From positions 124,001 through 188,000 of the forward strand of contig NZ_JMCB01000001.1 of NCBI RefSeq assembly GCF_000737315.1: DNA of 64,000 bases. The letters run 5' to 3'. Positions within the stretch are counted from its first letter, which is position 1, and every line of letters begins with the position of its first letter. The notes beneath the pieces were generated by a model, which saw only the letters and a list, made by a program, of their open reading frames with translations, was not told where the DNA came from and searched no databases. Position numbers and translations under genes: made by a program. This DNA comes from Hyalangium minutum (GTDB lineage: Bacteria; Myxococcota; Myxococcia; Myxococcales; Myxococcaceae). Shown piece after piece: positions 30,801-62,687 of the stretch.

Positions 30801-31880
30801 ATGGACTTCAGCGTCTACTTCTTCTCAGCCAACGATCAGGCCGACTTCGGCGAGCGCTACCGCTTCATCCTCGAGGTGGCGAAGTACATCGACCAAAACG
30901 GCTTCAAGGCCATCTGGACGCCCGAGCGCCACTTCCAGGAGTTCGGGGGCAGCTTCCCCAACGCCTCGGTGCTCAGCGCCGCGCTGGCGGTGCTCACCCA
31001 GAACATCGAGCTGCGCGCGGGCAGCGTGGTGGCCCCCCACCACCACCCGGCCCGTATCGCCGAGGAGTGGGCCCTGGTGGATCAGCTCTCCAACGGCCGG
31101 GTGGCGCTCTGCCTCGCCACGGGTTGGCACCGCGGGGACTTCATCTTCTACCCGGAGAACTACGCGGGCCGCCGCGAGCTCACCTTCCGCCTGGTGCAGA
31201 CGCTGCGAGATCTCTGGGCCGGGCGCCCGGTGACCTTCAGCGGCGTCGAGGGCCAGGCCGTGGAGGTGCGCACCTTCCCGCGCCCCCGCCGCCAGGAGCT
31301 GCCGCTGTGGCTCGTCCACAGCACCAACCCCGAGACCTGGGCCAAGGCCGGAGAGCTTGGCCTCAATGTCCTCACCCTGCTGGACAACTGGGACCGGCTC
31401 ACCGCCAACATCGCGGCCTATCGCGACGCGCGCGCCAAACACGGCCATGATCCGAAGTCCGGCATCGTGACCCTGGGCGTCCACACGTACATCGGCGATG
31501 ACGACACCACGGTGCGCAAGCTCGTCGCAGAGCCCGTGAAGCAGTACCTGTCCACGTTCCTCACCCAGCGCAAGGCGGATGCCACCCTGCAGGGCGGCTC
31601 CAAGCAGCTCGATGCCAAGGAGCAGGACATGCTGGCAACGCTGGCCTACCAGGACATGTACGACAAGCGGTCGCTGCTGGGCACGATCCCCAAGTGCGCC
31701 GACATGGTGCGGCGGATGCAGGAGATCGGCGTCGACGAGGTCGCTTGCCTCGTGGACTTCGGCCTGGACTTCCAGACTGTCTTGGACGGGCTGCCGCGCA
31801 TCAACGAGCTGCGCGCTATGTTCCAGCCAGCCGCCTCGAACGCCAGCGCCAGCGGCATGGCCTGGTACTACAACCGGTGA
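30801..31880 (+). CDS. luciferase-like (LLM class) flavin-dependent monooxygenase, MupA/Atu3671-type
   Basis: Motifs FSVYFF, WTPERHF.EFGG.FPN, RAGSVV.P.HHP.RIAEEW..VDQLSNGRV, GW..GDF; 11 nt after the PKS stop, with a GGAG RBS. Confidence 0.9.
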   Translation: MDFSVYFFSANDQADFGERYRFILEVAKYIDQNGFKAIWTPERHFQEFGGSFPNASVLSAALAVLTQNIELRAGSVVAPHHHPARIAEEWALVDQLSNGRVALCLATGWHRGDFIFYPENYAGRRELTFRLVQTLRDLWAGRPVTFSGVEGQAVEVRTFPRPRRQELPLWLVHSTNPETWAKAGELGLNVLTLLDNWDRLTANIAAYRDARAKHGHDPKSGIVTLGVHTYIGDDDTTVRKLVAEPVKQYLSTFLTQRKADATLQGGSKQLDAKEQDMLATLAYQDMYDKRSLLGTIPKCADMVRRMQEIGVDEVACLVDFGLDFQTVLDGLPRINELRAMFQPAASNASASGMAWYYNR

Positions 31881-31926
31881 ATCGAGTCCTCTTGGCCCAC
31901 CTCGGGCCCGAAGGCAGGAGAAGCAC

Positions 31927-34203
31927 TTGAGTCTCATCTTCGTCTTCCCAGGGCAGGGCTCTCAGCGCGTGGGCATGGGGGCGGATCTCTTCCCGGCCTT
32001 CCCCGAGCTGGTGGACAAGGCCAGCAACCTCCTTGGCTACTCGGTGCGCCAGCTGTGTCTGGAGGATCCGCAGGAGCGGCTGAACCAGACGCAGTTCACC
32101 CAGCCCGCGCTCTACGTGGTGAACGCGCTGAGCTACCTGGCGAAGGTGGAGCAGCTGCGGCGGAAGCCGGACTTCGTGGCCGGCCACAGCCTGGGCGAGT
32201 ACGACGCGCTCTTCGCCTCGGGGGTGGTGGACTTCGAGACAGGGCTGCGGCTCGTCCAGCGCCGGGGCGAGCTGATGGCCCGTGCCACCGGAGGAGGCAT
32301 GTGCGCCGTCGTCGGCCTGCCGCTGGAGGGGCTACAGGAGGTGCTCGCACGGGCCCCTGCGGTGGATGTCGCCAACCTCAACACCCCGCAGCAGACGGTC
32401 CTCGCTGGCCCCACCGCGGACCTGGAGGCCCTGCGCCAGCCGCTGCTCGACGCGGGCGCCCGCTCGGTGGTGCCGCTCAAGGTGAGCGCGCCCTTCCACT
32501 CGCGCTACATGGAGCCCGCGCGCCGCGAGTTCGCGGCCTTCCTTGAGGGCTTCCGCTTCGCGCCCCCGCGCCTCCCCGTCATCGCCAACGTGGACGCCCA
32601 GCCCTACACCGCTGCCAACACCCGCGACAACCTCGCTCGGCAGATCTCCAGCCCCGTCCGCTGGGTGGAGACGGTGCGCTACCTGATGCAGACCTCGGAG
32701 CGCCCCACCTTCGAGGAGGTGGGCCCAGGCACCGTGCTGGCGGGGCTCCTCAAGAAGATCCAGGCGGAGCTGCCCGCGCAGCCAGCGCCGCCAGCCGCCG
32801 CCAGCGCCCCGGCACGACAGGCTCCATCCTCCGCCTCGCCCTCGACAGGCCGGATCACCGCCGAGTCCCTGGGCAGCGCCGAGTTCCGGCGTGACCACGG
32901 CGTGCGCTACGCCTACGTGGCCGGCGCCATGTACAAGGGCATCGCCTCCGAGGCGCTCGTCATCCGCATGGGCAAGGCGGGCCTGCTCAGCTTCCTGGGC
33001 TCGGGCGGGCTGAAGCTGCAGCGCCTGGAGGAGGCCATCCGGAAGATCCAGGCGGAGCTGCCGCGAGGAGCTCCCTACGGGATGAACCTGCTGGCCAACC
33101 TGGAGCAGCCGGAGCAAGAGGACGCGGTGGTGGATCTGTTTCTCCGCTACGGCGTCACCCGCGTGGAGGCCGCGGCCTACATGCAGATCACCCCCAGCGT
33201 GGTGCGCTACCGCTGCCAGGGCCTGCGCCGCGCTCCGGACGGCTCCATCGTCGCGGAGAACAAGGTGCTCGCCAAGGTCTCCCGCCCGGAGGTGGCCGAG
33301 GCCTTCCTCAGCCCCGCTCCTGAGCGGCTCCTGAAGAAGCTGGTGGAGACGGGCCGGATCACCGCCGAGCAGGCGGCCTTGGCGCGGGACTTCCCCATGT
33401 GCGACGACCTGTGCGCGGAGGCGGACTCAGGCGGGCATACGGATCAGGGCGTGGCCTTTACGATGGTGCCCGCCATGCTGCTGCTGCGAGACGAGGTGTC
33501 GCGCCGCCACGGCTACCGGAAGCGGATCCGCGTGGGCGCCGCAGGCGGGATTGGCACGCCGCACGCGGCCGCCGCGGCCTTCATCCTGGGGGCCGACTTC
33601 GTGCTCTCCGGCAGCATCAACCAGTGCACGGTGGAGGCTGGCACCAGCGACATCGTCCGCGACATGCTCCAGCAGGCGGACATCCAGGACACGGAGATGG
33701 CGCCCGCGGGCGACATGTTCGAGCTGGGCGCCAAGGTGCAGGTCTTCAGCAAGGGCCTCTTCTTCGCGGCCCGGGCCAACAAGCTCTATGAGCTGTACCG
33801 CCGCTACAACTCCCTGGAGGAGATCGACGAGAAGACGCGCGAGCAGATCCAGACGCGCTACTTCAAGCGCAGCTTCGACGAGGTGTGGCGCGAGACGCGG
33901 GACTACTACCAGCGCGTGCACCCACACGCGCTCGAGAAGGCGGAGAAGAGCCCCAAGCACCGCATGGCGCTCATCTTCAAGTGGTACTTCGTCCACTCCA
34001 CCCGGCTGGCCACCCGAGGCGTGGCGGATCAGAAGGTCGACTTCCAGATCCAGTGCGGCCCGGCCATGGGCGCCTTCAACCGCTACGTGAAGGGCACGCC
34101 GCTGGAGTCCTGGCGCAACCGCCACGTGGACACCGTGGCCGAGATGATGATGACGCACGCCGCGGAGCACCTGCAGCAGCGGTTCACGGCGCTGCAGGGG
34201 TAG
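31927..34203 (+). CDS. trans-acting malonyl-CoA:ACP acyltransferase fused to PfaD-like flavin enoyl reductase (AT-ER)
   Basis: TTG start at 31927 preceded by AGGAG (the track start at 31579 overlaps the LLM gene). FVFPGQGSQ, GHSLGEY, RG.LM, SAPFHS (malonyl-type); C-terminal domain GAMYKGIAS, EADSGGHTD, GAAGGIGTP, QIQCGPAMGAFN. Confidence 0.93.
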   Translation: MSLIFVFPGQGSQRVGMGADLFPAFPELVDKASNLLGYSVRQLCLEDPQERLNQTQFTQPALYVVNALSYLAKVEQLRRKPDFVAGHSLGEYDALFASGVVDFETGLRLVQRRGELMARATGGGMCAVVGLPLEGLQEVLARAPAVDVANLNTPQQTVLAGPTADLEALRQPLLDAGARSVVPLKVSAPFHSRYMEPARREFAAFLEGFRFAPPRLPVIANVDAQPYTAANTRDNLARQISSPVRWVETVRYLMQTSERPTFEEVGPGTVLAGLLKKIQAELPAQPAPPAAASAPARQAPSSASPSTGRITAESLGSAEFRRDHGVRYAYVAGAMYKGIASEALVIRMGKAGLLSFLGSGGLKLQRLEEAIRKIQAELPRGAPYGMNLLANLEQPEQEDAVVDLFLRYGVTRVEAAAYMQITPSVVRYRCQGLRRAPDGSIVAENKVLAKVSRPEVAEAFLSPAPERLLKKLVETGRITAEQAALARDFPMCDDLCAEADSGGHTDQGVAFTMVPAMLLLRDEVSRRHGYRKRIRVGAAGGIGTPHAAAAAFILGADFVLSGSINQCTVEAGTSDIVRDMLQQADIQDTEMAPAGDMFELGAKVQVFSKGLFFAARANKLYELYRRYNSLEEIDEKTREQIQTRYFKRSFDEVWRETRDYYQRVHPHALEKAEKSPKHRMALIFKWYFVHSTRLATRGVADQKVDFQIQCGPAMGAFNRYVKGTPLESWRNRHVDTVAEMMMTHAAEHLQQRFTALQG

Positions 34204-34209
34204 CCCCGC

Positions 34210-34989
34210 TCAGGGCACCAGGAAGGGGATGAGCTGCTCCGAGAGGCCCCGGAGCAGCGCCTCCCGGGCGCCGCCCTTCTCGTTGAGATAGAAGTGGCCG
34301 CCGGGGAACATCTGCCGGGAGAAGGCTGCCGCGGTGTGCTGGCGCCAGGCCTCCAGTTCCTCCGGACGCGCGCGTGCGTCCTCCACGCCACCCAAGGTGG
34401 AGATGGGGCAGTCGAGCGGCGCCTCCCGCACGTGCGTATAGCTCTCCAGCACCGCGAAGTCCCCCCGCAGGCTGGGCAGGTACAGCTGCAGCAGCTCCGG
34501 CTCCGCCAAGATGGCGCGCGGGAAGCCGTTGTAGCGCTGCACCATCTCGCGGATGAACTGCTCTTGCGGCAGCGCGTGGATTGGGGGATCGGCGTGCTGC
34601 AAGTGCGGCGCGTGGCGCCCCGAGACGAGCAGGTGTGCGGGCTGGCGTCCATGGTTGCGGCGCAGCTCACGGGCCGTCTCGAAGGCCACCAGCGCCCCCA
34701 TGCTGTGCCCGAAGAAGGCCAGGGGGCCCTCCACGTGCCGGGCCAGGAGGGGCGCCAGCGCCTGGACGATCGCCGTCATTGAGGTGAAGGGCGGCTCACG
34801 GATGCGCGACTCGCGCCCTGGCAGCCGCACGAGCACCACCTCTACCCCGGGGGGCAGCAGATCCGCCCACCCGTGGTACACGGTCGTCCCCGCCCCCGCG
34901 TACGAGAAGCAGACCAACCGCACCATTGCCCCGGGGTCTGGCCGCGGACGCACCAACCACCGCCCTACCCACTCACGTTCATCCACCAT
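34210..34989 (-). CDS. type II thioesterase (editing TE)
   Basis: LVCFSYAGAG, RLPGRESR, FFGHSMGALVAFE, PGGHFY; convergent with AT-ER. Confidence 0.92.
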   Translation of the reverse strand: MVDEREWVGRWLVRPRPDPGAMVRLVCFSYAGAGTTVYHGWADLLPPGVEVVLVRLPGRESRIREPPFTSMTAIVQALAPLLARHVEGPLAFFGHSMGALVAFETARELRRNHGRQPAHLLVSGRHAPHLQHADPPIHALPQEQFIREMVQRYNGFPRAILAEPELLQLYLPSLRGDFAVLESYTHVREAPLDCPISTLGGVEDARARPEELEAWRQHTAAAFSRQMFPGGHFYLNEKGGAREALLRGLSEQLIPFLVP

Positions 34990-36200: not shown

Positions 36201-36247
36201 GATCCACCTCGACGCGGCACCGTGGCCGCGATTCAAAAGTCGGCTGA

Positions 36248-37471: not shown

Positions 37472-37515
37472 GGAAGGTTCCTCTCTCAGGGACGAAGACG
37501 GGCACCCCACCTGGG

Positions 37516-41433: not shown

Positions 41434-42762
41434 TCAGGCGGCGAAGGTCTTGGCGAGCTGCTGAGCCCGGACGAGCCCCATGATGAAGGGGATGGCGAAG
41501 TTGAGGGGGTGGACGTCCGGCGCGAGCTGGCGGGACAGGCCGAAGAGCGTCACCACGGCGCGCTCGACGCAGTACCACCCCTCCGGATACTGGAGCGCCT
41601 TGAGCAGGTCGCGCATCTCGCTGGCCTTCACGCCAATCTCCTCGGGCTTGCCAGGCTCGGTGCCGGGGGTCTTGCGCAGCTCCTCCACCACGCGCTTGAA
41701 GTAGCCGCGGATCACCCGCTCGAGCACCTCGCGCTTGCCCGCCTTGCTCATGAAGCCAATGGTCTCCACGCCGCGGATGACGAGCTCTTCATCCCGCGTG
41801 GCCACCCCGGTCAGCACCTGCTGCAACCCCTCGACGATGTGCGGCGCGGGCTCGGTGACCGTACCGAAGTCCAGCAGCACCAGGCGTGGGCCGGTGGGCC
41901 CCGGCTGCACGAAGAAGTTCCCGGGGTGCGGGTCCGCCTGGAAGAAGCGGTTCAGGAAGAACTGCTTGCAGAAGAGGCTGACCAGCCGGGTGGCCAGCGC
42001 CTTGCCGTCGATGCCGGCCGCCGCGAGCTCCTCCCGGCGCGTCATCTTGATGCCCTGCACGTAGCTCATCACCAGCACCTTCTCCGAGGTGAAGTCCCAG
42101 TACACCTGGGGGAAGCTCACGTCGGGCTCGCCGGCGAACTCCTGGGCCATGCGCTCCATGGCCCGTGCCTCGTGACGGAAGTCGGTCTCGCTGCGCAACA
42201 GCGCCTCGAGCTGCACCATCACCCGCTCCAGCGAGGCGACGGGGAAGAACAGGCGCGACATCTTCAGCGAGTGCCGCATCATCGCCATGTCCACCTTCAG
42301 CAGGCGGTGCGAGGTGGGGTAGAGGATCTTGACGGCAACCTCCTCCCCCGTCTTCAGCGTGGCGCGGTGCACCTGCGCCAGCGAGGCGGCGGCGATAGGT
42401 TGCTCCTCAAAGCGAGCGAACACCTCGTGGGGGCGCTTCCCCACCGCCCCCACGAAGGTGCGCTCCATCTCCGAGAAGGGATGCGGAGGCACCTGATCTT
42501 GCAGATCCTCCAGTTCCTCCATGTATGCGGCGGGAAGCACGTTGCCCATCAGCGAGGCCAGCTGCCCGAACTTGATGTAGACGCCGCGGAGCTTCTCGAT
42601 GCCGTGGTAGACGCGCCGCGCATTGGTGCGGTGCACACGCTCCCTGCGTTCCTTCATGCGCTCTTTGCCGAGCAGCTTTTCCAGGCTTACCTGGATCAAG
42701 TAGCTCAACATGATGGTATAGTAGAGAACCGAAGCGCGACCGAGCCTTGTCAATATCCACAT
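41434..42762 (-). CDS. UbiB/ABC1/AarF atypical protein-kinase-like protein (copy 1)
   Basis: KxGQ signature (IKFGQ), [39 protein letters not shown]. Confidence 0.93.
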
Positions 42763-44212: not shown

Positions 44213-47200
44213 TCAGCGGCCGCGCAGGGCCTCCTTCACGTGCTCCGCCATCGTGAGCGCGAAGGGGCGCCGCGGCAGGCTGAAGTGGTTGGCTCCCGGC
44301 ACATCCCTCGTCACCACCTCTCCCTTGAGGTAGGAGCGCCATCCCAGGATGTCGTCGCCGTAGTTATCGGTGAGCATTGTGGGCACCGTGGAGCGCACGA
44401 AGAGGACCCGCCCATCGTAGGGCTGGGCTTGGTAGCGCTCCCACACCGCCACGTGGTGCCGTACCAGCTTCTTGAGGTTCTCCATCTCTGGCTGCCGCGT
44501 GCTGAGCAGGGGCGACTGCTCATCCAGGATCTGCCCCAGCACGGAGTTGCGCTTGGCGAAGGCCAGCAGGCGCCGCTCCATCCAGTCAGAGAAGCCCGAC
44601 GCCTTCTCGCCCCGCTTCGCCCGCTCCGCGCGCCGTGAGGCGAGCCGCACGAACATGTCGTCCATCGCATACGGGGCGAAGCCGCCCCAGATCTCGATGA
44701 AGCTGCGGATCTTGCGGTACATCAGCCGCAAGGGGCTGTGGCCGCTCCAGCGATCATTGGCGAAGGGGGCATCCAGCAGCGCCAGCAGCTCCACCTTCTG
44801 CGAGGCGGCGCGAAGCTGCTGCGCCATCTCGAAGGCCACCATGCCGCCGAAGCAGTAGCCGCCCAGGTAATACGGCCCCTCGGGCTGGACGGTGCGAATG
44901 GCCTGGACGTAGCTCGCCGCCATATCGCGCACGTCCGCTTGGGTCTTGCTCAGATCGGTGATGGCGGGATCCTGGATCGCGTAGACGGGCCGCTCCTTGC
45001 CCACCTGCTGCGCGAAGTCGACCAGGGCAAACGCCACTCCACCCGCGCCGTGCACGCAGAAGAAGGGCGAGCCATTGCCCGCCTTCTGGATGGGGACGAG
45101 CGCGCTGGCGGAGGCTCCCGCGGGGACGATGTCCGCCCGCGCGCTCACGAGCAGAGCCAGCGTGGCCGCCGTGGGAGCCTCGAAGAAGCCCATCAGCGGG
45201 AAAGTACAGCCGAAGGTGTCCTGGACCTCTTTGATCAAGGTGATGGCGGACAGAGAGTTGCCACCCAGCTCGAAGTAGTTGTCCCCCACACCCACCGGGC
45301 GAAGGCTCAGCTGGGCCTCCAACATCTGGACGATCTTCCGCTCCACGTCATTGCGCGGGGCCACGTACGGCTCGGCCATCTCGGGGCGCACGGCCTCGGG
45401 CGGAGGCAGGGCCTTGCGGTCGAGCTTGCCGTTGGGCGTCAGTGGCAGCGTGTCGAGCACGATGAAGTGGGAGGGGACCATGTGCGCCGGCAGCCTCGCG
45501 CCCACCCACTCCCTCAACATGGAGGGCAGCTTGCCTGTGGAGAGGGCCCGCTTGGGGAAGCGGCAGTACTGCTCGGGCGCACCCAGCGTCCCGTATCGGT
45601 CCGGACGGAAGGAGGACGGAACCTGGCCCGCCTTCTCCCGGTAGAACTGCGCGTCGAAGCCACCGGGCGCATCGCCCACAGACCAGCAGATCGCCACACG
45701 CCACCCGTGACGGGCGGCCAGCTCGCGCACCGCCTCCGGGTGCAGCCCCGGCTGGCCCTGGGCCTCCTGGGGCAGGCGCGCATTGGGAATCCCGCGCACG
45801 AGGAAGGCGGGCTCGGAGGACTCCTTCGCCAGCTTCTCCAGCGCGGCCATGTCCACGGGCTGGGTGGCCCAGTCGCGCACCGGCTGCTGCGCGAGGAAGG
45901 CGGGCTGGGACTGAACCTGGAGGAAGGCGTCGTAGCGGAAGCGGGTGAACTCGTTCTCGCTGCGGCCCTCGCGCAGCTCCACGCGCACGCGATCCACCTG
46001 CGGGAACGTCCCCGCCAGAGCGTGGAAGAACTCGGGGCTGATCACCAGCTCCTTCTCGTTGAGCAGCGCCACCTCCAGCCTGCGCGCCAGCTCCTCCTGG
46101 GAGAACGGCTTGGCGGCGCGGTGCCGCAGGATGTCCGCGTGGAACACCTCCTGGAGGTGCGCGTTGCGGATGTCGCCCATGAAGAGCACGCCGCCGGGAG
46201 CCAGCAAGTCCAGCGCCTGGCGAATGACGGACAGGAAGTACTCGGCGTCCGGGAAGTACTGCACCACCGAGTTGAGGATCACGAGGTCATACTCGTGGCT
46301 CCCCAGGCCGGACAGCTGGTTGGCCTCGCGCTGGAGCACGCGGGCGTTGCTCAGCCCCTCCTTCTCAAAGCGGGCCTGCAGGTGATCCACGGCGCTCTGA
46401 GAGAAGTCCAAGCCGGTGTACTGCTCACAGCGCTTGCTGAGCGGCAACGCCAGGAGTCCCAGGCCGCTGCCGATCTCCAGGACGCGGCGCGGGGAGAGCG
46501 CGAACAGCCGCTGGAGCGTGGTATCGGCCCACTCCCGCATCTCCGCTTCCGGCACCAACTGGCCCGTGTAGCTGCTGCGGTAGCCGGCGAACGGGTTGTC
46601 GCGGCTCTCGATGACGGCCTGCCGGCCGCCGCCCTCGTGCAGGTAGGCCTCGTTGAACAACCCCTGCCAGTCTGTGGACTCCGCGCGGCCCACCACCTCC
46701 GCGGGCACCACGTAGCAGATCAGCCGCGAATCCTGGTTCGCGTCCTCGTCCTTGATGACCACGGCTTCGGAGACGGCCGGGTGCTGGCGCAGCGTGTTCT
46801 CGATCTCGCCAGGCTCGATGCGGTAGCCGCGGATCTTCACCTGGTGATCCACGCGCCCCAGGTACTCGAGGTTGCCGTCCGCGTGCATGCGGACGCGATC
46901 CCCGGTCCGGTACCAGCCCTGCACGAACTTCTCCTGGTTGAGCTCCGGCCGGTTGAGGTAGCCACGGGCCACCCCCACCCCACCGATCCACAGCTCCCCC
47001 ACCTCGCCAGCCGGCACGGGCTGGCCCGACTCATCGGCGACCTTCAGCTCGGTGTTGTCGATCGGCTTGCCAATCAGCATCGCCTCAGAGTGGAGATCCA
47101 CCAGCCACCCGGTGGAGTAGATGGTGGTCTCGGTGGGGCCGTACCAGTTCCAAACGCGCTTGCCGCGGGACAGCAGCTGCTCGGCCAGCTCGCGAGAGAG

Positions 47201-48094
47201 AGGCTCGCCGCCAGTGCAGATGGTGAGGTTGGAGCGGCTCTTCCACCCGAGCTTGAGCAGCATCTTCCAGCCCGAGGCCGTGGACTGCGCGTAGGTGGCC
47301 GAGCTGCGCTCCAGGAGCGCGGCGAACCGCTCCCCATCCTTGAGCTCGTTGCGATCGGCCACCCACGTGGTGCCGCCCACCAGCAGCGCCAGGTGCAGCT
47401 CCGCCGCCGCGATGTCGAAGCAGATCGACGCGGTGGCCAGATAGGTATCCGTGGGCCCCATGCCCGTCAGCCGGTGGACGGAGAGCAGCAGGTTGGTGAG
47501 GGAGCGGTGCTCGATCTGCGCCCCCTTGGGCCTGCCCGTGGAGCCCGACGTGTAGAGCACGTAGGCGCGATCCGTGGGCCGCGGGCCGTCCTGCCGGGAC
47601 ACGGGCGGCGCCGCGGCGATGGCGGCGGCATCCCGATCGACGCAGATGGCCTCCGTGCCATCTCCGAGCAGCTCGCCCAGCAGCGCCTCCTCGGTGATGA
47701 CCAGCCGGATCCCCGCGTCCTTCCAGATGTAGCGCAGGTGCTCCGGCGGGTAGTCCGGATCCATGGGCACGTACGAGCCCCCGGACAGCATCACGCCCAG
47801 GGTGGCGGCCACCATGTCGTTGGAGCGGCGCAGCAGGATGCCCACGGGCGTCTCGCGAGTGACGCCACGGGACCGGAGGTAGCCCGCCAGCCGGCAGACC
47901 CGCTCCCTCAGCTCCGCATACGTCCACGCGCGCGACCCGTCCCGGAGAGCGCAGTCCTGGGGCGTCCGCTCCGCCTGCTCACAGAACAGATCACACGCCG
48001 TCCGCTGAAGACGGGAGTGCTCCTCCGGCCCAAATGCCGACTGCGCGGCCACCACCGACGAGCTCACCTGCCGAGCAACACTGGTTCCCTGCAT
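44213..48094 (-). CDS. stand-alone NRPS-like protein: A domain interrupted by N-methyltransferase, PCP, thioesterase with Cys nucleophile; no C domain
   Basis: A motifs YTSGSTGRPKG, FDI, GGE, NWYGPTE, YRTGD, GRVDHQVKIRGYRIE; inserted MT LEIGSGLG and ILNSVVQYFP; A10 PNGKLDR; PCP FELGGNSL; TE GYCFGG..D..NHF. Confidence 0.93.
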   Translation of the reverse strand: MQGTSVARQVSSSVVAAQSAFGPEEHSRLQRTACDLFCEQAERTPQDCALRDGSRAWTYAELRERVCRLAGYLRSRGVTRETPVGILLRRSNDMVAATLGVMLSGGSYVPMDPDYPPEHLRYIWKDAGIRLVITEEALLGELLGDGTEAICVDRDAAAIAAAPPVSRQDGPRPTDRAYVLYTSGSTGRPKGAQIEHRSLTNLLLSVHRLTGMGPTDTYLATASICFDIAAAELHLALLVGGTTWVADRNELKDGERFAALLERSSATYAQSTASGWKMLLKLGWKSRSNLTICTGGEPLSRELAEQLLSRGKRVWNWYGPTETTIYSTGWLVDLHSEAMLIGKPIDNTELKVADESGQPVPAGEVGELWIGGVGVARGYLNRPELNQEKFVQGWYRTGDRVRMHADGNLEYLGRVDHQVKIRGYRIEPGEIENTLRQHPAVSEAVVIKDEDANQDSRLICYVVPAEVVGRAESTDWQGLFNEAYLHEGGGRQAVIESRDNPFAGYRSSYTGQLVPEAEMREWADTTLQRLFALSPRRVLEIGSGLGLLALPLSKRCEQYTGLDFSQSAVDHLQARFEKEGLSNARVLQREANQLSGLGSHEYDLVILNSVVQYFPDAEYFLSVIRQALDLLAPGGVLFMGDIRNAHLQEVFHADILRHRAAKPFSQEELARRLEVALLNEKELVISPEFFHALAGTFPQVDRVRVELREGRSENEFTRFRYDAFLQVQSQPAFLAQQPVRDWATQPVDMAALEKLAKESSEPAFLVRGIPNARLPQEAQGQPGLHPEAVRELAARHGWRVAICWSVGDAPGGFDAQFYREKAGQVPSSFRPDRYGTLGAPEQYCRFPKRALSTGKLPSMLREWVGARLPAHMVPSHFIVLDTLPLTPNGKLDRKALPPPEAVRPEMAEPYVAPRNDVERKIVQMLEAQLSLRPVGVGDNYFELGGNSLSAITLIKEVQDTFGCTFPLMGFFEAPTAATLALLVSARADIVPAGASASALVPIQKAGNGSPFFCVHGAGGVAFALVDFAQQVGKERPVYAIQDPAITDLSKTQADVRDMAASYVQAIRTVQPEGPYYLGGYCFGGMVAFEMAQQLRAASQKVELLALLDAPFANDRWSGHSPLRLMYRKIRSFIEIWGGFAPYAMDDMFVRLASRRAERAKRGEKASGFSDWMERRLLAFAKRNSVLGQILDEQSPLLSTRQPEMENLKKLVRHHVAVWERYQAQPYDGRVLFVRSTVPTMLTDNYGDDILGWRSYLKGEVVTRDVPGANHFSLPRRPFALTMAEHVKEALRGR

Positions 48095-48148: not shown

Positions 48149-48598
48149 TCAGCCCGCCGCGCGAGCGGCACCCTCGGCCCGAGCCTTGAGCGCCTGGTTC
48201 ATCGCCTCGAAGCTCTTGCGGGCGCCCTCTTGAACCTGCGCGCCCATGAGCGCCGAGAGCGGGCCGGTGAAGATCTCACGGTTGACGAACACCGCCTCAC
48301 GGGCGCCCTTCGGCTCCACCGTGCAGCTGTGCCGGCTGACCAGCAACCAGCCATTCAACACCTTACTCTCCCACTCCAGCTCGCGGCCCGGCGTCACCTG
48401 GACGATCTTCGGCCGAAAGCTCCGCACCGTCCGGGGATCCATCTGCACGGTGATCTCCAACGGCTTGCCCACCACCATCTCTCCCTGGGCCTGGCGCAGG
48501 AAAGGGTTCCACTCGGCGAACGCCTTGAAATCCGTCAGGATGCTCCAGACCTGCTCGGCCGGTGCCTGGATATGGATCTCGGTGCGAATCTCTTTCAC
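48149..48598 (-). CDS. SRPBCC/START-like (polyketide cyclase 2 family) lipid-binding protein
   Basis: GTG start with GGAG RBS; IHIQAPAEQVWSILTDF...EWNP; C-terminal helix FEAMNQALKARAE. Confidence 0.85.
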   Translation of the reverse strand: MKEIRTEIHIQAPAEQVWSILTDFKAFAEWNPFLRQAQGEMVVGKPLEITVQMDPRTVRSFRPKIVQVTPGRELEWESKVLNGWLLVSRHSCTVEPKGAREAVFVNREIFTGPLSALMGAQVQEGARKSFEAMNQALKARAEGAARAAG

Positions 48599-48775: not shown

Positions 48776-50098
48776 ATGTCGGACGAAGGTGAGATCCCCC
48801 GCGGCAAGATGCGTCGGCTCGGGCGCATGCTGACGCTTCCAGGACGTGCAGGCACGCAGCTGGTCTCGGCAGGCCTGCAGAAAGTGCTCGGCAAAGCAGT
48901 GGACCCGGGCCGCGCCGCCGCCTCGCGAGTGATGGAAGTGCTTGGGGAGATGAAGGGCATCCCCGTCAAGGCCGGCCAGCTGATGACCCTCTTTGGCGAC
49001 AACCTGCCCGAGGAGGCCCGCAAGACGCTGGGCCAGCTGTTCGCCAAGACCCCCACGCTGCCTTTTCCGCAGGTGCGCCACGCCCTGGAGACCGAGCTGG
49101 GCAAGTCCCTGAGCGAGGTCTTCGAATCCTTCGAAGAGACGCCCTGCGCTGGTGCCTCGCTCGGCCAGGTGCACCGCGCCCGGCTGCACTCCGGCGAGAA
49201 GGTGGCCGTCAAGGTCCAATACCCCGGCATCGCTGGCGCCATGCAGGAGGATCTCGAGCTGATCCGGCCCATCGTGAAGACCCTGGGCATGGCCGGCAGC
49301 CTCCTCGACACGAAAGAATACTACGAGGAGATGAAGCGCGATCTGGCCGACGAGCTCAACTACAAGCAGGAGCTGGCCAGCCTCGAGCAGTTCCGCACCT
49401 ACCTGTCCCACTGGCCTGAGCTGGTGGTGCCGCGCAGCTTCCCCGAGTTCAGCACCAGCCGGGTGCTGGTGCTCGAGTGGCTCGAGGGGCCCACCCTGCA
49501 CTCCTGGCTGGAGTCGCCTCACCCCGAGAGCGAGCGCCTCGCCCTGGCCGAGAAGCTGGTGCGCGCCGTCTACGGCCCCTTCCTGCTCCACCGCGTGGTG
49601 CACGGCGACACCCACCCCGGCAACTTCCTGGTGCTGGAGGGCGGCAAGCTGGGCGTGCTCGACTTCGGCGCCATCAAGCCCCTCTCCGAGCCCTTCTGGC
49701 ATGCCGTGGTCTCCGTCATGCAGGGCATGCTGGAGAATCGCAAGGTGGACATCGTCCCCCTGGTGCGGCAGGCCGGCTTCCGCCTCGACATGCCCGAGGA
49801 GCGCGCGCGCACCCTCGTCGAGCGCATCCACGAGCTCATCTCCAGCCCCTTCAAGGGGCCCTATGACTTCGGCAGTGATCAGCTCATCGCCGGCTTCACG
49901 GAGCTCAAGAAGAAGTACCCGCTGGATCTGCTCCGCGTCAGGCCTCCGGCGGAGGGGCTGCTCTTCTACCGGGCCATTGGCGGGCTGAGCCAGAACCTGC
50001 GCCGCCTCCAGATCAAGGGCGACTTCCGCCCCTTCTTCCGCGAGGCGCTCGCCGCTCCCCACCACGTCGAACTGGCACGCGCGCGCCGCTTGGGCTGA
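48776..50098 (+). CDS. UbiB/ABC1/AarF atypical protein-kinase-like protein (copy 2)
   Basis: MKG..VKAGQ (KxGQ), AGASLGQVHRA, VAVKVQYPGI, ELNYKQE, HGDTHPGN, LDFG. Confidence 0.93.
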   Translation: MSDEGEIPRGKMRRLGRMLTLPGRAGTQLVSAGLQKVLGKAVDPGRAAASRVMEVLGEMKGIPVKAGQLMTLFGDNLPEEARKTLGQLFAKTPTLPFPQVRHALETELGKSLSEVFESFEETPCAGASLGQVHRARLHSGEKVAVKVQYPGIAGAMQEDLELIRPIVKTLGMAGSLLDTKEYYEEMKRDLADELNYKQELASLEQFRTYLSHWPELVVPRSFPEFSTSRVLVLEWLEGPTLHSWLESPHPESERLALAEKLVRAVYGPFLLHRVVHGDTHPGNFLVLEGGKLGVLDFGAIKPLSEPFWHAVVSVMQGMLENRKVDIVPLVRQAGFRLDMPEERARTLVERIHELISSPFKGPYDFGSDQLIAGFTELKKKYPLDLLRVRPPAEGLLFYRAIGGLSQNLRRLQIKGDFRPFFREALAAPHHVELARARRLG

Positions 50099-50116: not shown

Positions 50117-50170
50117 GGGCCCCTGACGCCAGGGCCTGAGGGATTGGAGCCACTGACGCCCGGTGGCTTC
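50117..50170. terminator. two tandem imperfect hairpins between convergent genes
   Basis: gggcccctgacgccagggcc (50117-50136) and ggagccactgacgcccggtggcttc (50146-50170). Confidence 0.45.
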
Positions 50171-50780
50171 AGTCCTCCACCAGCGGAACGATCCCGAACT
50201 GCTGCCGGAGCTTTTTCAGATCCTCCCCCAGCATGTTCTCCAAGGGCTGCTCGATCAGGCAGACCGCCTTCCTGCCCTGCTCAAGCCCCCACTCCTCGGC
50301 GTGACGCAGCCGAGCTCTGCGGCTGGGGTTGACGACCGCGTAGGCTCTCCTGGCGAAGCGGTACACCCGGCTGCCGGTCTCGGAATATCCCTGCGAATGA
50401 TAGAAGGCATAGGTCCCGAGCTCTCCGACCGTCGTCGCGTCGCACCCCAGGAGGGTATGGAACATGTCGTGCGTTCTCGTCACCCGGGTGGAGAGAGGGA
50501 ACCGGGCGTAGAGCCCGGCCAGTTGAGGCGTCAGATTGACGGTCCCGAGGTTGTAGCGCCGCATGAAGTCGGAATACGCGCGGCCAAAAGTCCCCTTCGG
50601 CATGGCCGCCAATTCGGCCATGTCCACGCGTTTCAAATTGAGATCCATGAAGCCTTTGACCCTCTCACGGATGACGGGGTTCTCATGAGGCTCGGACGCC
50701 ACAGCCTTGAGCACGGCGACATCTCCCATGCGCTTCTCGTGCAGTGCCAAGATCATCGCCGCGAGGACATCCACCTTCAT
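50169..50780 (-). CDS. Coq4-family metalloprotein (copy A)
   Basis: ATG at 50780 with AGGAG RBS, overlapping the upstream SDR stop (ATGA). L..MPKGTFGRAY..FM and HDMFH-x11-E (HDMFHTLLGCDATTVGE), the Coq4 metal-binding motif. Confidence 0.85.
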   Translation of the reverse strand: MKVDVLAAMILALHEKRMGDVAVLKAVASEPHENPVIRERVKGFMDLNLKRVDMAELAAMPKGTFGRAYSDFMRRYNLGTVNLTPQLAGLYARFPLSTRVTRTHDMFHTLLGCDATTVGELGTYAFYHSQGYSETGSRVYRFARRAYAVVNPSRRARLRHAEEWGLEQGRKAVCLIEQPLENMLGEDLKKLRQQFGIVPLVED

Positions 50781-51694
50781 CTGGGCTCTCCTGTGCTCAC
50801 TTTCACCCTCTCCATCGCCGAGGGTGACATGCTCACTCCCGTCACACGCTCCGAGTACTCCCAGAGCTTGCGCGCTGTCTCGACATCGTACGAGCTCTTG
50901 CTCGAGCGCTCTTCCTGGCACTTGCGCCAGATCCCGCCAAAGTACTTGCCGCTCACGCCCTCCAGCTCCGGGGCTGACGCGGCCCAGACCTGCGTCACCG
51001 CGCCTTCCTCGGGCGTCAGAAACCCGAGCGACCTGACCGCCATGAGCATCGCCACGGCCGGCAGCAGGAAGACCGCGCCGGAGTTGGCGTTGATGCTGGT
51101 GGCGGCCGCCCCGGGATGGACGCAGTTGGCCGTCACGCCAGTTCCCTCCAGCCGCCGTGCCAGCTCGTAGGTGAACAGGACGTTGCACAGCTTGGAATGG
51201 GCGTACGACTTGAGCATGCTGTAGCCGCGCTCAAGCTGGAGATTGTCGAAGTCCAGGGCGTACTGCCCGTGCTTATAGGACGAGACGTTGACGATGCGGG
51301 AAGGAGCCCCCGCCCGGAGCGCCTCCAGCAATTGGAGCGTCAGGGCGAAGTGGCCCAGGTGGTTCACGCCCAACACCATCTCGAACCCGTCCACCGTCGT
51401 CCGCCGCTCGGGCAGCGCCAGGCCAGCGTTGTTGACCAGCGCATGGAGCCGGTCATACCGCGCGCTGAACTGCTCGACGAAGGAGCGGATGGAGGCCAGC
51501 GAGGCGAGATCGCAGAGCATCAGCTCCACCTCCCTGTTTCCAGAGCGGCCCCGCACCTCGTCCCGCGCGGCCTCACCTCGGGCCTTGTCACGGCACACCA
51601 TCACCACCCGGGCCCCTTGCCGCGCCAACGCCAACGCCGTCGCGCGCCCCAGCCCCGCATTGGCCCCCGTGATCAAACAAATCTTGTCTTGCAT
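50777..51694 (-). CDS. short-chain dehydrogenase/reductase, retinol-dehydrogenase/WWOX-like (copy A)
   Basis: ATG at 51694; ITGANAGLG, CDLASLASI, LVNNAG, NHLGHF, IVNVSS, YAHSK, VHPG. Confidence 0.92.
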   Translation of the reverse strand: MQDKICLITGANAGLGRATALALARQGARVVMVCRDKARGEAARDEVRGRSGNREVELMLCDLASLASIRSFVEQFSARYDRLHALVNNAGLALPERRTTVDGFEMVLGVNHLGHFALTLQLLEALRAGAPSRIVNVSSYKHGQYALDFDNLQLERGYSMLKSYAHSKLCNVLFTYELARRLEGTGVTANCVHPGAAATSINANSGAVFLLPAVAMLMAVRSLGFLTPEEGAVTQVWAASAPELEGVSGKYFGGIWRKCQEERSSKSSYDVETARKLWEYSERVTGVSMSPSAMERVKVSTGEPR

Positions 51695-51713
51695 CCCAGC
51701 CCCCACAAACGGC

Positions 51714-52373
51714 CTACCGGAAGAGGCTCGCGATCGCCGCTGGCAGCCCCGTGGGGCTCGCCCGGAAGTAGATGTCCAGGTGATCGTCATCCGTCCGGAC
51801 GGCCCGCAGCCCCACAACGGGGTTGATCGTCGCCAGGAAGCGGCGGATGCCCGGGTTGTTGGCAAAGTCAGGGCTCTTCAACAAGTCGAAGCACACCCGA
51901 TCATCTTGGGCCTCGACCAGGGTGGGGGGGCGCTCGGGCAGGTGCACCAGCAGGTTGGCCGGCTTGGTGAAGTCGAGCTCCCCCGACTTGATCTTCGCGA
52001 TGACCGGAGAGGTGCCGTCACCCTCGTCGAGGATCTCGGCCTTCATCTCCGAGACACGGAACTCCAAGCGCACCTCGTCCTTGTTGATGCGCAGATCATC
52101 CAGCGCGACCACGAGCGAAGCGCGGAGCAGCGAGGAGCCCAGGGCATCGAGTGTCGTGGTGAGCTTCAATCCCGGGGGCGCGGGCGAGATGATGACGTCC
52201 TTCTTGTGCCCCTGCCCCGAGACGAACGTACGGGCCAGGTAGCGCGGCACGGCCAGGGGGATGCCCAGCCGCAGCTTCATCATCCCTCGGATGGCCCGGG
52301 GAACCTCTTCTGGGTGCTCCTTGAGATACTCCTTCACCGCGAGGAAGAGCGTTTTGGCGTTCGGCTTGCTCAT
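51714..52373 (-). CDS. hypothetical protein (219 aa)
   Basis: Co-oriented ORF filling the gap between the two SDR genes; ATG at 52373; no recognisable motif. Confidence 0.65.
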   Translation of the reverse strand: MSKPNAKTLFLAVKEYLKEHPEEVPRAIRGMMKLRLGIPLAVPRYLARTFVSGQGHKKDVIISPAPPGLKLTTTLDALGSSLLRASLVVALDDLRINKDEVRLEFRVSEMKAEILDEGDGTSPVIAKIKSGELDFTKPANLLVHLPERPPTLVEAQDDRVCFDLLKSPDFANNPGIRRFLATINPVVGLRAVRTDDDHLDIYFRASPTGLPAAIASLFR

Positions 52374-54187: not shown

Positions 54188-54260
54188 GGCGACTCCTCAC
54201 TTTCACGTGAGCCCAGAGGGCAGCTTCCGCCCTGGGCTACGGACAATACAGAGTGTACAG

Positions 54261-55101: not shown

Positions 55102-55190
55102 GATGCAGGCTCCTGTTTCAGGCTCCTCCATACCATTGGATTCGTGAGTCTGTAGCGGGCTGTCCGTCATCCTGCGCGGCGCCCTGTGGA

Positions 55191-55514: not shown

Positions 55515-55567
55515 CGGGAAAACGGCGCCACCCTACCCCATTGCCGCGCGCGCGCCCAAGCGAAGCC

Positions 55568-60359: not shown

Positions 60360-60572
60360 GGTTCTATCCCTCGGAAAAAGCCTGGCCGGTCCCTGCGCTG
60401 CGCCGGAAAGGCCTCCCCTATATAAGGTGTACGGCTTGATCGGTAGGCGGGGGTGGGTGCACGTAAGCCCCCACCAGCATGCGGATTTGGCTGGAAAGTT
60501 CAACCTGTGGGAAGTAGAGGCCCCGCCTGCCCTGTTCCCCCAGGCATTTTTCAAGAGAAGAAGGACCGGATC

Positions 60573-62687
<2,115 letters not shown>

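What the first reader, a model, noticed from the sequence alone, without database searches (positions are those of the whole stretch)
44213..48094. Condensation-less NRPS A(N-MT)-T-TE with a cysteine-nucleophile thioesterase
Seen: the TE elbow is G-Y-C-F-G (Cys codon 44852-44854) with His retained (NHF). An N-MT (NSVVQYFP) is inserted between A8 and A9, and there is no C domain. Established: Cys-for-Ser hydrolase folds do unusual chemistry, including beta-lactone release by ObiF1 (obafluorin), beta-lactam release by SulM (sulfazecin) and aminoacyl shuttling by CmaE/SyrC. Inference: one polypeptide activates and N-methylates an amino acid, and its TE acts as a transacylase. The acceptor could be a hydroxyl of the polyketide (ester prodrug or side chain), the PKS loading ACP, or the dead TE platform. 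I know no characterised enzyme with this exact architecture serving a trans-AT PKS.
Basis: partly seen in the sequence, partly recalled or inferred. Interest (0 to 1): 0.82.

Follow-up and report, generated by a model that had tools for sequence, protein, structure and literature searches.

The report
Stand-alone N-methylating NRPS module, cysteine thioesterase
An intact one-module peptide-synthetase gene (activate, methylate, carry and release an amino acid, with a cysteine in place of the usual serine in the release domain) sits in a polyketide gene cluster of the myxobacterium Hyalangium minutum, where it most likely adds or supplies a small N-methyl amino acid; this is an uncommon variant of known enzymes, not a new kind.

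Summary
Window 44213-48094 (-) encodes a 1293-aa A(MT)-T-TE protein with every core motif intact. There is no condensation domain in the protein, and no HHxxxDG motif anywhere in the 64-kb window. The TE elbow reads G-Y-C-F-G, with Cys1081 (TGC, 44852-44854), Asp1108 and His1270.

The Cys is real: the only ortholog-level relative (50% identity, a Nanopelagicales MAG) also has GGYCFGG. It is not exceptional, though. About 30% of the closest TE domains carry Cys, interleaved with Ser-bearing near relatives.

The TE is a canonical type-I TE with the Asp after strand β6, like AB3403 (PDB 4ZXH). It lacks the ObiF1/SulM hallmarks. Other C-less A(MT)-T-TE proteins exist in unrelated contexts.

The gene is linked to the trans-AT PKS. 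Sorangium sp. So ce362 carries the homologous PKS end, MupA-type monooxygenase and TEII, followed directly by a deleted relic of this gene. The relic's substitution pattern shows past purifying selection.

My best reading (about 0.4) is an accessory tailoring cassette, FrsA-like, that loads a small amino acid from a glycine-type A-domain lineage, N-methylates it and transfers it through the Cys-TE to the polyketide. Hydrolytic release and in-trans loading remain open. I rate it a new variant of a known kind, of moderate interest.

The parts
44213..48094 (-). Complete gene for the 1293-aa A(MT)-T-TE protein; the stop codon is at 44213-44215.
   Evidence: ORF list and translation. Pfam architecture. 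GC3 is 0.91, like the neighbouring genes.
46700..47980 (-). Adenylation domain, N-terminal part through A8 (aa 39-465). The Stachelhaus code is D-I-A-Q-C-G-W-I-Y(-K).
   Evidence: Motifs A1-A8 are present. The code comes from a MAFFT alignment to GrsA-PheA. In the alignment it resembles the two proteins carrying the Gly code DILQLG(L/M)(I/V)W (P0251, P0349), sharing the QxTxxxW...GWK motif.
45515..46699 (-). Methyltransferase insertion between A8 and A9 (aa 466-860). Motifs: VLEIGSGLG, NSVVQYFP, NEFTRFRYDAF, GIPNARL.
   Evidence: Pfam Methyltransf_12/25/23/11 at aa 520-675. One continuous alignment to the TioS interrupted A domain 5WMM over aa 38-898, E 5.9e-139.
45410..45514 (-). A9-A10 segment of the adenylation domain (aa 861-895): LPAHMVPS and NGKLDRK.
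45155..45337 (-). Thiolation (carrier) domain (aa 920-980). The phosphopantetheine Ser947 in GGNSL is encoded at 45254-45256.
   Evidence: Pfam PP-binding. Coordinates.
44216..45082 (-). Type-I thioesterase domain (aa 1005-1293) with a long helical lid (about aa 1110-1230).
   Evidence: Pfam Thioesterase. AlphaFold2 model with mean pLDDT 85.4. Foldseek top matches are 7CRN, 4ZXH (AB3403), NocB TE, GbnD6 TE and Pks13 TE.
44852..44854 (-). Codon TGC for Cys1081, the nucleophile at the elbow G-Y-C-F-G.
   Evidence: In the model it follows strand E91-96. The aligned column holds Ser in 53 and Cys in 23 of 76 sequences.
44771..44773 (-). Codon for Asp1108, the triad acid. It lies 27 residues after the nucleophile, directly after strand beta6 ('position I').
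   Evidence: Asp occupies this column in 63 of 76 homologs.
44285..44287 (-). Codon for His1270 (the NHF motif), the triad base.
   Evidence: His occupies this column in 71 of 76 homologs.
48149..48598 (-). SRPBCC / Polyketide_cyc2 gene (149 aa), 54 nt upstream on the same strand. It is probably co-transcribed with the target.
   Evidence: Pfam. Gene calls in L001.
28993..30786 (+). C-terminus of the last PKS protein: a dead TE-like domain (28993-29835) followed by an intact Ser-TE (29884-30786). The intact TE belongs to the same TE subfamily as the target's TE.
30801..34989 (.). MupA-family luciferase-like monooxygenase (30801-31880, +), trans AT-ER (31579-34203, +) and type II TE (34210-34989, -). 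In Sorangium the relic of the target gene directly follows the homologs of the monooxygenase and the TEII.

Best explanation
The gene encodes an accessory, self-contained aminoacyl cassette of the trans-AT polyketide cluster of Hyalangium minutum DSM 14724.

Proposed steps:
1. The A domain adenylates a small alpha-amino acid. Its pocket derives from the glycine-type lineage, so glycine or a near relative is most likely.
2. The A domain loads the amino acid onto Ser947 of its own T domain.
3. The methyltransferase embedded between A8 and A9 N-methylates the tethered amino acid with SAM.
4. The C-terminal type-I TE takes the N-methyl-aminoacyl group onto Cys1081 as a thioester.
5. The TE passes the group to a nucleophile on the polyketide, most simply a hydroxyl. 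This mirrors the monomodular FrsA, whose TE transesterifies its side chain onto a finished macrocycle.

Shown here: the architecture, the intact motifs, the triad geometry in a confident model, conservation of the Cys, linkage to the PKS cluster, and past purifying selection on the gene.

Inferred: the substrate identity, N- rather than O-methylation, and above all the transfer step and its acceptor.
For: - Architecture and intact A1-A10, MT, T and TE motifs.
- D235 and K517 are retained, and the code DIAQCGWIY shares 6 of 10 positions with the Gly code (as recalled from the literature). The same code DILQLGLIW occurs in the same-architecture protein P0251.
- No C domain or HHxxxDG motif occurs anywhere in the window. 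An amide bond made by a neighbouring C domain is therefore not available locally.
- The Cys1081/Asp1108/His1270 triad is placed canonically in a model with pLDDT 85. The Cys is conserved in the 50%-identical relative P0002.
- Linkage to the PKS: Sorangium sp. So ce362 has the homologous PKS terminus (57% identity), LLM (69%) and TEII (54%). These are followed immediately by four collinear fragments of this gene (aa 76-133, 895-1022, 1118-1199 and about 1270-1290) at 64-88% identity.
- Codon-position identities in the relic are 92/95/62% and 83/93/72% (positions 1/2/3). This shows the gene evolved under purifying selection before it was deleted.
- The gene is dispensable for the core pathway. 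The Sorangium PKS ORF (4940 aa) is intact although the cassette is destroyed. About 16 Streptomyces species carry the homologous PKS end, LLM and TEII with no such gene within 10 kb. This parallels the frsA knockout, which accumulates FR-Core (PMC7794379).
- One Streptomyces homolog (L022) has a C-less A-T didomain plus a discrete TE at the same position.
- The PKS has its own intact Ser-TE for chain release, so the second TE needs another job.
- A same-architecture Cys-TE protein with the Gly code lies in a polysaccharide gene cluster (P0251). This is another setting where transfer to a free hydroxyl or amine is the obvious role.
Against: - No acceptor, product or activity is known.
- In this TE subfamily Ser and Cys alternate between near-identical relatives, so the Cys does not by itself indicate transfer chemistry.
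- Same-architecture proteins also occur as the terminal module behind an A-T-C protein (P0349), inside an NRPS lipopeptide cluster (P0249), and as an orphan in a cyanobacterial genome (P0244). The architecture therefore does not dictate a transacylase role.
- The part of the cluster upstream of the window was not readable. It includes a 4685-aa PKS and whatever precedes it, and it could hold a C domain or an A-less module.
- In Hyalangium the gene lies about 9 kb from the TEII, separated from it by transporter and unknown genes.
Confidence: 0.4

Rival explanations
1. The protein is a self-contained synthetase with hydrolytic or self-condensing release. The TE simply hydrolyses the N-methyl-aminoacyl thioester, supplying a free N-methyl amino acid such as sarcosine, or it couples two units into a dimer or diketopiperazine. 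No transfer to the polyketide occurs.
For: - An orphan A(MT)-T-TE sits in a cyanobacterial genome with no biosynthetic neighbours (P0244). This shows the architecture can work alone.
- The TE is a canonical type-I TE by sequence and fold.
- Ser and Cys interchange freely in the subfamily.
Against: - An ATP- and SAM-consuming three-domain machine is a costly way to make a free N-methyl amino acid.
- The gene stayed next to the same PKS cluster in two myxobacterial lineages and was under purifying selection.
- A thioester acyl-enzyme gives no obvious advantage for hydrolysis.
Confidence: 0.2
2. The protein is an in-trans loading or terminal module. The A(MT)-T part delivers its aminoacyl thioester to a KS or C domain of the assembly line encoded elsewhere, as a starter or extender unit. 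The TE acts only as an editing domain, or releases a chain built on this T domain.
For: - P0349 is preceded by an overlapping A-T-C protein, so its missing C domain is supplied by the upstream protein.
- P0249 lies between an ACP and a C-starting NRPS.
- The upstream part of this cluster was not seen.
Against: - No C domain motif occurs in any frame of the 64-kb window, and none is in the three PKS proteins.
- The PKS ends in its own intact TE.
- Sorangium keeps a full-length PKS ORF while this gene is reduced to fragments, and no intact paralog turned up in the protein searches. That is hard to reconcile with an essential starter module.
- The Streptomyces homologs lack the gene within 10 kb.
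Confidence: 0.2
3. The gene does not belong to the PKS pathway. It serves the adjacent set of lipid- or quinone-type genes (two ABC1/UbiB-like ATPases, an SRPBCC protein, two Coq4-like proteins, short-chain dehydrogenases), for example by aminoacylating a lipid.
For: - The SRPBCC gene is 54 nt upstream on the same strand.
- ABC1-family genes flank the pair on both sides.
- About 9 kb of transporter and unknown genes separate the gene from the PKS genes.
Against: In Sorangium the relic lies directly after the PKS-associated TEII, and none of the ABC1, SRPBCC or Coq4 genes is present in that locus.
Confidence: 0.12
4. The gene is intact but functionally silent or decaying, as it already is in Sorangium.
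For: - The orthogroup is very rare: one MAG fragment plus one relic.
- The Sorangium copy is a pseudogene.
Against: The ORF is uninterrupted, all catalytic motifs are present, and GC3 matches the neighbours.
Confidence: 0.05

Closest known systems
FrsA of FR900359 biosynthesis (Cstarter-A-T-TE) and the Sln9 TE of salinamide: TE-mediated intermolecular transesterification (PMC7794379)
   Same: Both are one-module NRPS proteins ending in a TE, encoded beside a separate assembly line that has its own releasing TE. In both cases the core is made without the module: the frsA knockout accumulates FR-Core, and here the PKS stays intact where the gene has decayed. This is the closest precedent for how the enzyme may work.
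   Different: FrsA has a starter C domain that N-acylates its amino acid and has no methyltransferase. Here there is no C domain, the amine would stay free apart from N-methylation, the partner is a trans-AT PKS, and the nucleophile is Cys.
AB3403 of Acinetobacter baumannii (PDB 4ZXH/4ZXI), C-A-T-TE
   Same: It is the closest solved TE that also carries a Cys (elbow GGWCFGG, 73 bits). It has a Cys nucleophile with the Asp at position I after beta6 (PMC11298585).
   Different: AB3403 has a C domain and no methyltransferase, and its product and TE chemistry are uncharacterised.
ObiF1 (obafluorin beta-lactone) and SulM (sulfazecin beta-lactam) Cys thioesterases
   Same: Both use a Cys nucleophile in an NRPS terminal TE.
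   Different: They have the Asp at position II after beta7, and SulM has a Gln-Cys-Asn motif. The target has the Asp at position I and Tyr-Cys-Phe. A TE-only phmmer search did not retrieve ObiF1 (6N8E), and neither enzyme is in the Foldseek top 50. They also act on peptidyl chains delivered by C-containing modules.
TioS A4a-M4-A4b interrupted adenylation domain (PDB 5WMM)
   Same: The methyltransferase is inserted between A8 and A9. The two proteins align in one continuous stretch over aa 38-898.
   Different: TioS is part of a multimodular NRPS with C domains, and no TE is fused to that module.
CmaE / SyrC aminoacyl-shuttling Cys hydrolases
   Same: They share the concept of a Cys on an alpha/beta-hydrolase fold carrying an aminoacyl group between carriers.
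   Different: These are stand-alone proteins, not fused PF00975 TE domains. No reference sequence was available, so the relationship was not tested. The structures nearest the target are all assembly-line TE domains.
Pks13 TE of Mycobacterium tuberculosis
   Same: It is a type-I TE that offloads by acyl transfer to a free hydroxyl (trehalose; this function is from my own knowledge). It is among the fold-search matches.
   Different: It has a Ser nucleophile, a very long-chain substrate and a PKS context, and shares only about 18-20% identity.

Membership tests
NRPS interrupted adenylation domain (methyltransferase between A8 and A9) | Core motifs A1-A10 present, with D235 and K517 for alpha-amino acid binding | tested here: met
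   Motifs read from the translation. D235 and K517 from the alignment to GrsA.
NRPS interrupted adenylation domain (methyltransferase between A8 and A9) | SAM-dependent methyltransferase inserted between A8 and A9 | tested here: met
   Pfam MT families at aa 520-675, lying between A8 (aa 413-423) and A10 (aa 888-893). Continuous alignment to 5WMM.
NRPS interrupted adenylation domain (methyltransferase between A8 and A9) | Methylation occurs on the backbone nitrogen rather than on O, S or C | not testable with these tools
   Inferred only, from N-MT-like motifs (recalled from the literature) and a Gly-type pocket that leaves no side-chain acceptor.
Type-I thioesterase domain (PF00975, alpha/beta hydrolase) | Family profile match and fold | tested here: met
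   PF00975 at E 1.7e-22. Model pLDDT 85.4. Foldseek probability 1.00 to NRPS and PKS TE domains.
Type-I thioesterase domain (PF00975, alpha/beta hydrolase) | Nucleophile-Asp-His triad at the canonical positions | tested here: met
   Cys1081 after beta5, Asp1108 after beta6, and His1270. The Asp column is conserved in 63 of 76 homologs and the His column in 71 of 76.
Beta-lactone / beta-lactam-forming Cys TEs (ObiF1, SulM) | Cys nucleophile | tested here: met
Beta-lactone / beta-lactam-forming Cys TEs (ObiF1, SulM) | Catalytic Asp relocated to position II (loop after beta7) | tested here: not met
   The criterion comes from PMC11298585. The target's conserved Asp1108 directly follows beta6, which is position I.
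Beta-lactone / beta-lactam-forming Cys TEs (ObiF1, SulM) | Gln-Cys-Asn elbow (SulM type) | tested here: not met
   The elbow reads Tyr-Cys-Phe.
Beta-lactone / beta-lactam-forming Cys TEs (ObiF1, SulM) | Sequence or fold proximity to 6N8E or the SulM TE | tested here: not met
   Not retrieved at E <= 1e-3 with the TE alone. Absent from the best 50 Foldseek matches.
Transesterifying monomodular NRPS (FrsA type) | Single module ending in a TE, beside an assembly line that has its own releasing TE | tested here: met
Transesterifying monomodular NRPS (FrsA type) | The core product is made without the module | tested here: inconclusive
   Indirect evidence only: an intact PKS ORF next to the decayed gene in Sorangium, and Streptomyces homologs that lack the gene.
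Transesterifying monomodular NRPS (FrsA type) | Starter C domain that acylates the amino group | tested here: not met
   No Condensation domain is present.
Transesterifying monomodular NRPS (FrsA type) | The TE catalyses intermolecular acyl transfer to the core | not testable with these tools
   This needs an enzyme assay.
CmaE / SyrC aminoacyl shuttles | Stand-alone Cys hydrolase acting between two carrier proteins | not tested
   No reference sequences were on hand. The target's hydrolase is a fused PF00975 domain.

The most novel reading that the evidence does not exclude
This would be a condensation-domain-free route for decorating a trans-AT polyketide. A single protein makes N-methyl-aminoacyl-S-T (sarcosyl-like), and its Cys-TE esterifies a hydroxyl of the finished or carrier-bound polyketide, leaving a free secondary amine. 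The cassette would be an optional add-on that homologous clusters gain and lose: intact in Hyalangium, freshly deleted in Sorangium, absent or replaced by A-T plus a discrete TE in Streptomyces.
Probability: 0.3. Interest if true: 0.65.

Novelty: new variant of a known kind. Interest (0 to 1): 0.5.

Why it matters
If the Cys-TE does transfer a free-amine N-methyl amino acid onto a polyketide, it would extend the short list of TE domains that act as intermolecular acyltransferases (FrsA, Sln9, Pks13). It would be a compact, C-domain-free cassette that might be moved to aminoacylate other polyketides and change their charge and solubility. It would also give a functional test case for the many uncharacterised Cys-type TE domains, which make up about 30% of this subfamily. 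Finally, it points to an uncharacterised family of trans-AT PKS clusters shared by myxobacteria and about 16 Streptomyces species, whose product is unknown to me.

Tried and rejected
1. ObiF1/SulM-type beta-lactone or beta-lactam chemistry. Rejected on the Asp position, the elbow motif and the lack of sequence or fold proximity.

2. Cys as a sequencing error or strain-specific change. Rejected because P0002 and the five nearest TE domains also have Cys.

3. Cys as a rare hallmark. Rejected because the column holds 23 Cys and 53 Ser in 76 relatives, interleaved in the clustering.

4. The architecture as unique. Rejected because P0244, P0247, P0249, P0251, P0261, P0286 and P0349 are full-length C-less A(MT)-T-TE proteins.

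5. More orthologs. Three protein searches, the exhaustive representative search and a metagenome scan found nothing closer than 40% apart from P0002.

6. A tartrolon/boromycin-type cluster, considered because boromycin carries a valine ester and tartrolons come from Sorangium. The idea is not supported. The module order is cMT module, then KS0-ACP, then elongating KS-ACP-TE*-TE. That places the MupA-type hydroxylation one extension before the chain end, not at C2. The tartrolon cluster paper (PMC3557025) is not held, and no boromycin cluster paper was found.

7. PDB and NCBIfam searches of the SRPBCC protein and the unknown 455-aa neighbour gave nothing useful.

8. The promoter and terminator scan of the locus was uninformative.

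9. The cluster upstream of the window could not be read beyond 2.7 kb.

Full report
**Source and locus.** The window is part of contig JMCB01000001.1 of assembly GCA_000737315.1. JMCB00000000 is Hyalangium minutum DSM 14724T (PMC5441343). Window position 1 corresponds to record position 124,001.

**Check of the observation.**
- ORF 44213-48094 on the minus strand encodes 1293 aa.
- Pfam finds AMP-binding (aa 39-380), several SAM-methyltransferase families (aa 520-675), a split AMP-binding_C, PP-binding (aa 920-980) and Thioesterase (from aa 1010). It finds no Condensation domain.
GYCFG is at aa 1079-1083 with the Cys1081 codon TGC at 44852-44854. NSVVQYFP is at aa 608-615, between A8 (aa 413-423) and A10 (aa 888-893). 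NHF is at aa 1269-1271.
- All A-domain core motifs, the SAM-binding motif VLEIGSGLG and the carrier serine (GGNSL, Ser947) are intact.
- No HHxxxDG and no MbtH signature occurs in any frame of the 64-kb window.
- GC3 of the gene (0.91) matches its neighbours.

**Is the Cys real, and is it special?**
- The protein is a singleton in the 5.8-billion-protein collection. Its only ortholog-level relative is P0002, a partial protein from a Nanopelagicales MAG (50% identity, same architecture). P0002 also reads GGYCFGG.
The Cys is not a strain-specific change or a sequencing error.
- A TE-only search shows that Cys is frequent in this TE subfamily. Among the best hits with a recognisable elbow, 32 have Cys and 80 have Ser. 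The five closest all have GGLCFGG.
- In a 76-sequence alignment the nucleophile column holds Ser 53 times and Cys 23 times. In an identity-based clustering the Cys sequences are interleaved with near-identical Ser sequences.
- Ser and Cys have therefore been exchanged repeatedly here. The Cys alone is weak evidence for unusual chemistry.

**What kind of TE is it?**
- An AlphaFold2 model built from that alignment is confident (mean pLDDT 85.4, pTM 0.83). It places Cys1081 right after strand beta5, Asp1108 right after beta6 and His1270 in the loop after the last strand. A long helical lid lies in between.
- Asp1108 and His1270 are conserved in 63 and 71 of the 76 relatives.
- The closest solved structures are ordinary assembly-line TE domains: 7CRN/7DXO, AB3403 (4ZXH), NocB TE, GbnD6 TE, Pks13 TE and EntF.
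- AB3403 is the nearest one that also has Cys (GGWCFGG).
- The SulM structure paper states that SulM and ObiF1 have the catalytic Asp moved to the loop after beta7 (position II), and that SulM has a Gln-Cys-Asn elbow. It also states that AB3403 is the only other solved Cys-TE and keeps the Asp after beta6 (PMC11298585).
- The target has the AB3403 arrangement and a Tyr-Cys-Phe elbow. ObiF1 was not retrieved by the TE-only sequence search, and neither ObiF1 nor SulM appears among the top 50 fold matches.
- The ObiF1/SulM analogy is therefore not supported. The CmaE/SyrC analogy could not be tested for lack of reference sequences.

**The adenylation and methylation parts.**
- I aligned the A domain to GrsA-PheA. 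I recalled that sequence from memory and checked its numbering at all ten Stachelhaus positions.
- The specificity code is D-I-A-Q-C-G-W-I-Y with K517 in NGKLDRK. D235 and K517 indicate an alpha-amino acid.
- The code shares six of ten positions with the glycine code DILQLGLIWK (recalled from the literature). In the alignment the domain resembles P0251 and P0349, which carry DILQLG(L/M)(I/V)W, sharing the QxTxxxW...GWK motif.
- Four pocket positions differ from the glycine code: A239, C299, W322 and Y331. Glycine (giving sarcosine) or another small amino acid is likely, but this is a low-confidence call.
- P0002 has a related but different code, DVTQFVFVY.
- The methyltransferase occupies the a8/a9 position. 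The protein aligns in one piece with the TioS interrupted A domain 5WMM over aa 38-898.
- N-methylation rather than O-methylation is inferred, not shown.

**Is the architecture unique?** No. A search with aa 431-1293 found full-length proteins of 1280-1405 aa with the same domains and no Condensation domain. Their contexts differ.

| Protein | TE elbow | A-domain code | Context |
|---|---|---|---|
| P0251 | Cys | Gly | Between a glycosyltransferase and a polysaccharide flippase |
| P0349 | Odd elbow (GCNFGG) | Gly | Follows an overlapping A-T-C protein, so its C domain is supplied by the upstream protein |
| P0249 | Ser | Beta-amino-acid-like | Micromonospora lipopeptide NRPS cluster |
| P0244 | Ser | Cys-like | Orphan in a cyanobacterial contig |
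| P0247, P0286 | Thr-like elbow (GDTLGG) in P0247; Ser in P0286 | Ala | Not examined |
| P0261 | Cys | Val | Not examined |

A T-TE protein with Cys (P0162) follows a fatty-acyl-AMP ligase. The exhaustive representative search and a metagenome scan found no further close ortholog.

**Link to the polyketide cluster.**
- The window holds three trans-AT PKS genes (1-30789). They are preceded outside the window by the start of the first gene and by a 4685-aa PKS.
- They are followed by a MupA-family luciferase-like monooxygenase (TIGR04020 at 421 bits, cut-off 244), a trans AT-ER and a type II TE.
- The last PKS reads KR-ACP-KS-DH-KR-cMT-ACP-KS(no HGTG)-ACP-KS-ACP-TE*-TE. TE* has Gly, Ala and Cys in place of the triad, and the final TE is intact with Ser.
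- The target lies 9 kb beyond the TEII. In between are LolA-like and MacB-type ABC genes, unknown genes and an ABC1-family gene.
- The decisive evidence comes from Sorangium sp. So ce362 (CP150332.1). There the homologous PKS end (57% identity), monooxygenase (69%) and TEII (54%) are followed directly by a relic of the target gene.
- The relic consists of four collinear fragments: aa 76-133, 895-1022, 1118-1199 and about 1270-1290. Their identity to the target is 64-88%. The first and last fragments are in a different reading frame from the middle two. The A core, the methyltransferase and the TE elbow are deleted.
- In two of the fragments (aa 73-133 and 1118-1199), identity at codon positions 1/2/3 is 92/95/62% and 83/93/72%. 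This is the signature of purifying selection, so the gene was functional in that lineage until recently.
- The adjacent 4940-aa PKS ORF is still intact.
- About 16 Streptomyces species and Phytohabitans flavus carry the same PKS end, monooxygenase and TEII without this gene within 10 kb. One of them (L022) has a C-less A-T didomain plus a separate TE at that spot.
- Together this shows the gene is a cluster-associated but dispensable accessory.

**Mechanism.**
- The PKS has its own releasing TE, and no C domain is nearby. The module is dispensable for keeping the PKS. The simplest role for a second, Cys-type TE fused to an aminoacyl carrier is therefore to pass the N-methyl-aminoacyl group to a nucleophile on the polyketide.
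- The best precedent is FrsA. Its TE transesterifies a side chain onto the finished FR-Core, and deleting frsA leaves the core accumulating. Sln9 of salinamide is cited as similar (PMC7794379).
- I give this reading about 0.4.
- Hydrolytic or self-condensing release gets about 0.2, supported by the orphan P0244.
- In-trans loading of a C or KS domain encoded upstream gets about 0.2. It is supported by P0349 and P0249, but argued against by the Sorangium relic beside an intact PKS.
- Service to the neighbouring ABC1/SRPBCC/Coq4-like genes gets about 0.12. It is argued against by the Sorangium locus, which lacks those genes.

**Verdict.** This is a new variant of a known kind, namely monomodular NRPS proteins with an interrupted A domain and a terminal TE. 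The combination of no C domain, a Cys nucleophile and a trans-AT PKS partner is rare: one intact copy, one MAG fragment and one relic. It is a good, cheaply testable candidate for a TE-type aminoacyltransferase.

Noticed in passing
window 28993-30786 (+): The last PKS protein ends in two TE-like domains in tandem. The first (aa 4304-4584) has Gly, Ala and Cys in place of Ser, Asp and His and is catalytically dead. The second is intact (GGYSYGG, Ser codon 30127-30129). Both are conserved in the Sorangium homolog.
   Followed up: partly
window 24220-26400 and 30801-31880 (+): The KS at PKS3 aa 2713-3135 lacks the HGTG histidine motif and is followed only by an ACP. A MupA-family luciferase-like monooxygenase gene follows the PKS. 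This looks like a mupirocin-type alpha-hydroxylation bimodule placed one extension before the chain end.
   Followed up: partly
L003 9841-10700 (Sorangium sp. So ce362, CP150332.1); also L004: This is a pseudogene relic of the target gene: four collinear fragments in two reading frames with three internal deletions. NCBI annotates it as a 230-aa 'phosphopantetheine-binding protein'. Third-codon positions are far more diverged than first and second positions.
   Followed up: yes
L011-L025, L028 (Streptomyces spp., Phytohabitans flavus): A homologous trans-AT PKS terminus, MupA-type monooxygenase (58-61% identity) and TEII occur in about 16 actinomycete species. I could not identify the product of this cluster family.
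   Followed up: partly
L022 12095-15306 (Streptomyces sp. NPDC005955): Right after the TEII of the homologous cluster lie a C-less A-T didomain protein (618 aa, code DLISVAVCC), a 166-aa unknown and a discrete TE. This may be a split functional analogue of the target cassette.
   Followed up: partly
window 41434-42762 (-) and 48776-50098 (+): Two ABC1/UbiB-family genes flank the target. Both match the NCBIfam model for the macrolide-binding ATPase MABP-1 (Rv3197, which confers macrolide resistance, PMC8696161), but far below its cut-off. They could be self-resistance or lipid-chaperone proteins.
   Followed up: partly
window 48149-48598, 50169-51188, 53480-54196 (-): An SRPBCC (Coq10-like fold) gene and two Coq4-like genes sit with the two ABC1 (Coq8/UbiB-like) genes and two short-chain dehydrogenases. 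This is a set reminiscent of coenzyme-Q accessory proteins, placed inside a secondary-metabolite region. The ORF calls 50169-51188 and 50777-51865 overlap, and I did not resolve which is real.
   Followed up: no
window 60453-62687 (+): An elongation factor G homolog lies at the edge of the cluster region and is followed by a DEAD-box helicase. It could be housekeeping, or a resistant target copy.
   Followed up: no
L008 227-7187 (soil metagenome): P0251 is an A(MT)-T-TE with a Cys elbow (GGYCNGG) and the glycine code. It sits directly after a family-2 glycosyltransferase and a polysaccharide flippase, which suggests sarcosyl or glycyl decoration of a glycan.
   Followed up: partly
L007 8217-11251 (Gammaproteobacteria MAG): A fatty-acyl-AMP-ligase-like gene is followed by a T-TE protein with a Cys elbow (P0162). 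This is another recurring context for Cys-type TEs.
   Followed up: no
window 35040-39488 (-): A LolA-like protein, a large FtsX/MacB-type permease and an ABC ATPase lie between the PKS genes and the target, probably forming an exporter. In Sorangium an RND pump occupies the corresponding place.
   Followed up: no
window 54334-55590 (-): A second type II thioesterase gene lies downstream. Its called ORF has a 170-aa low-complexity N-terminal extension, which is probably an over-long start call.
   Followed up: no
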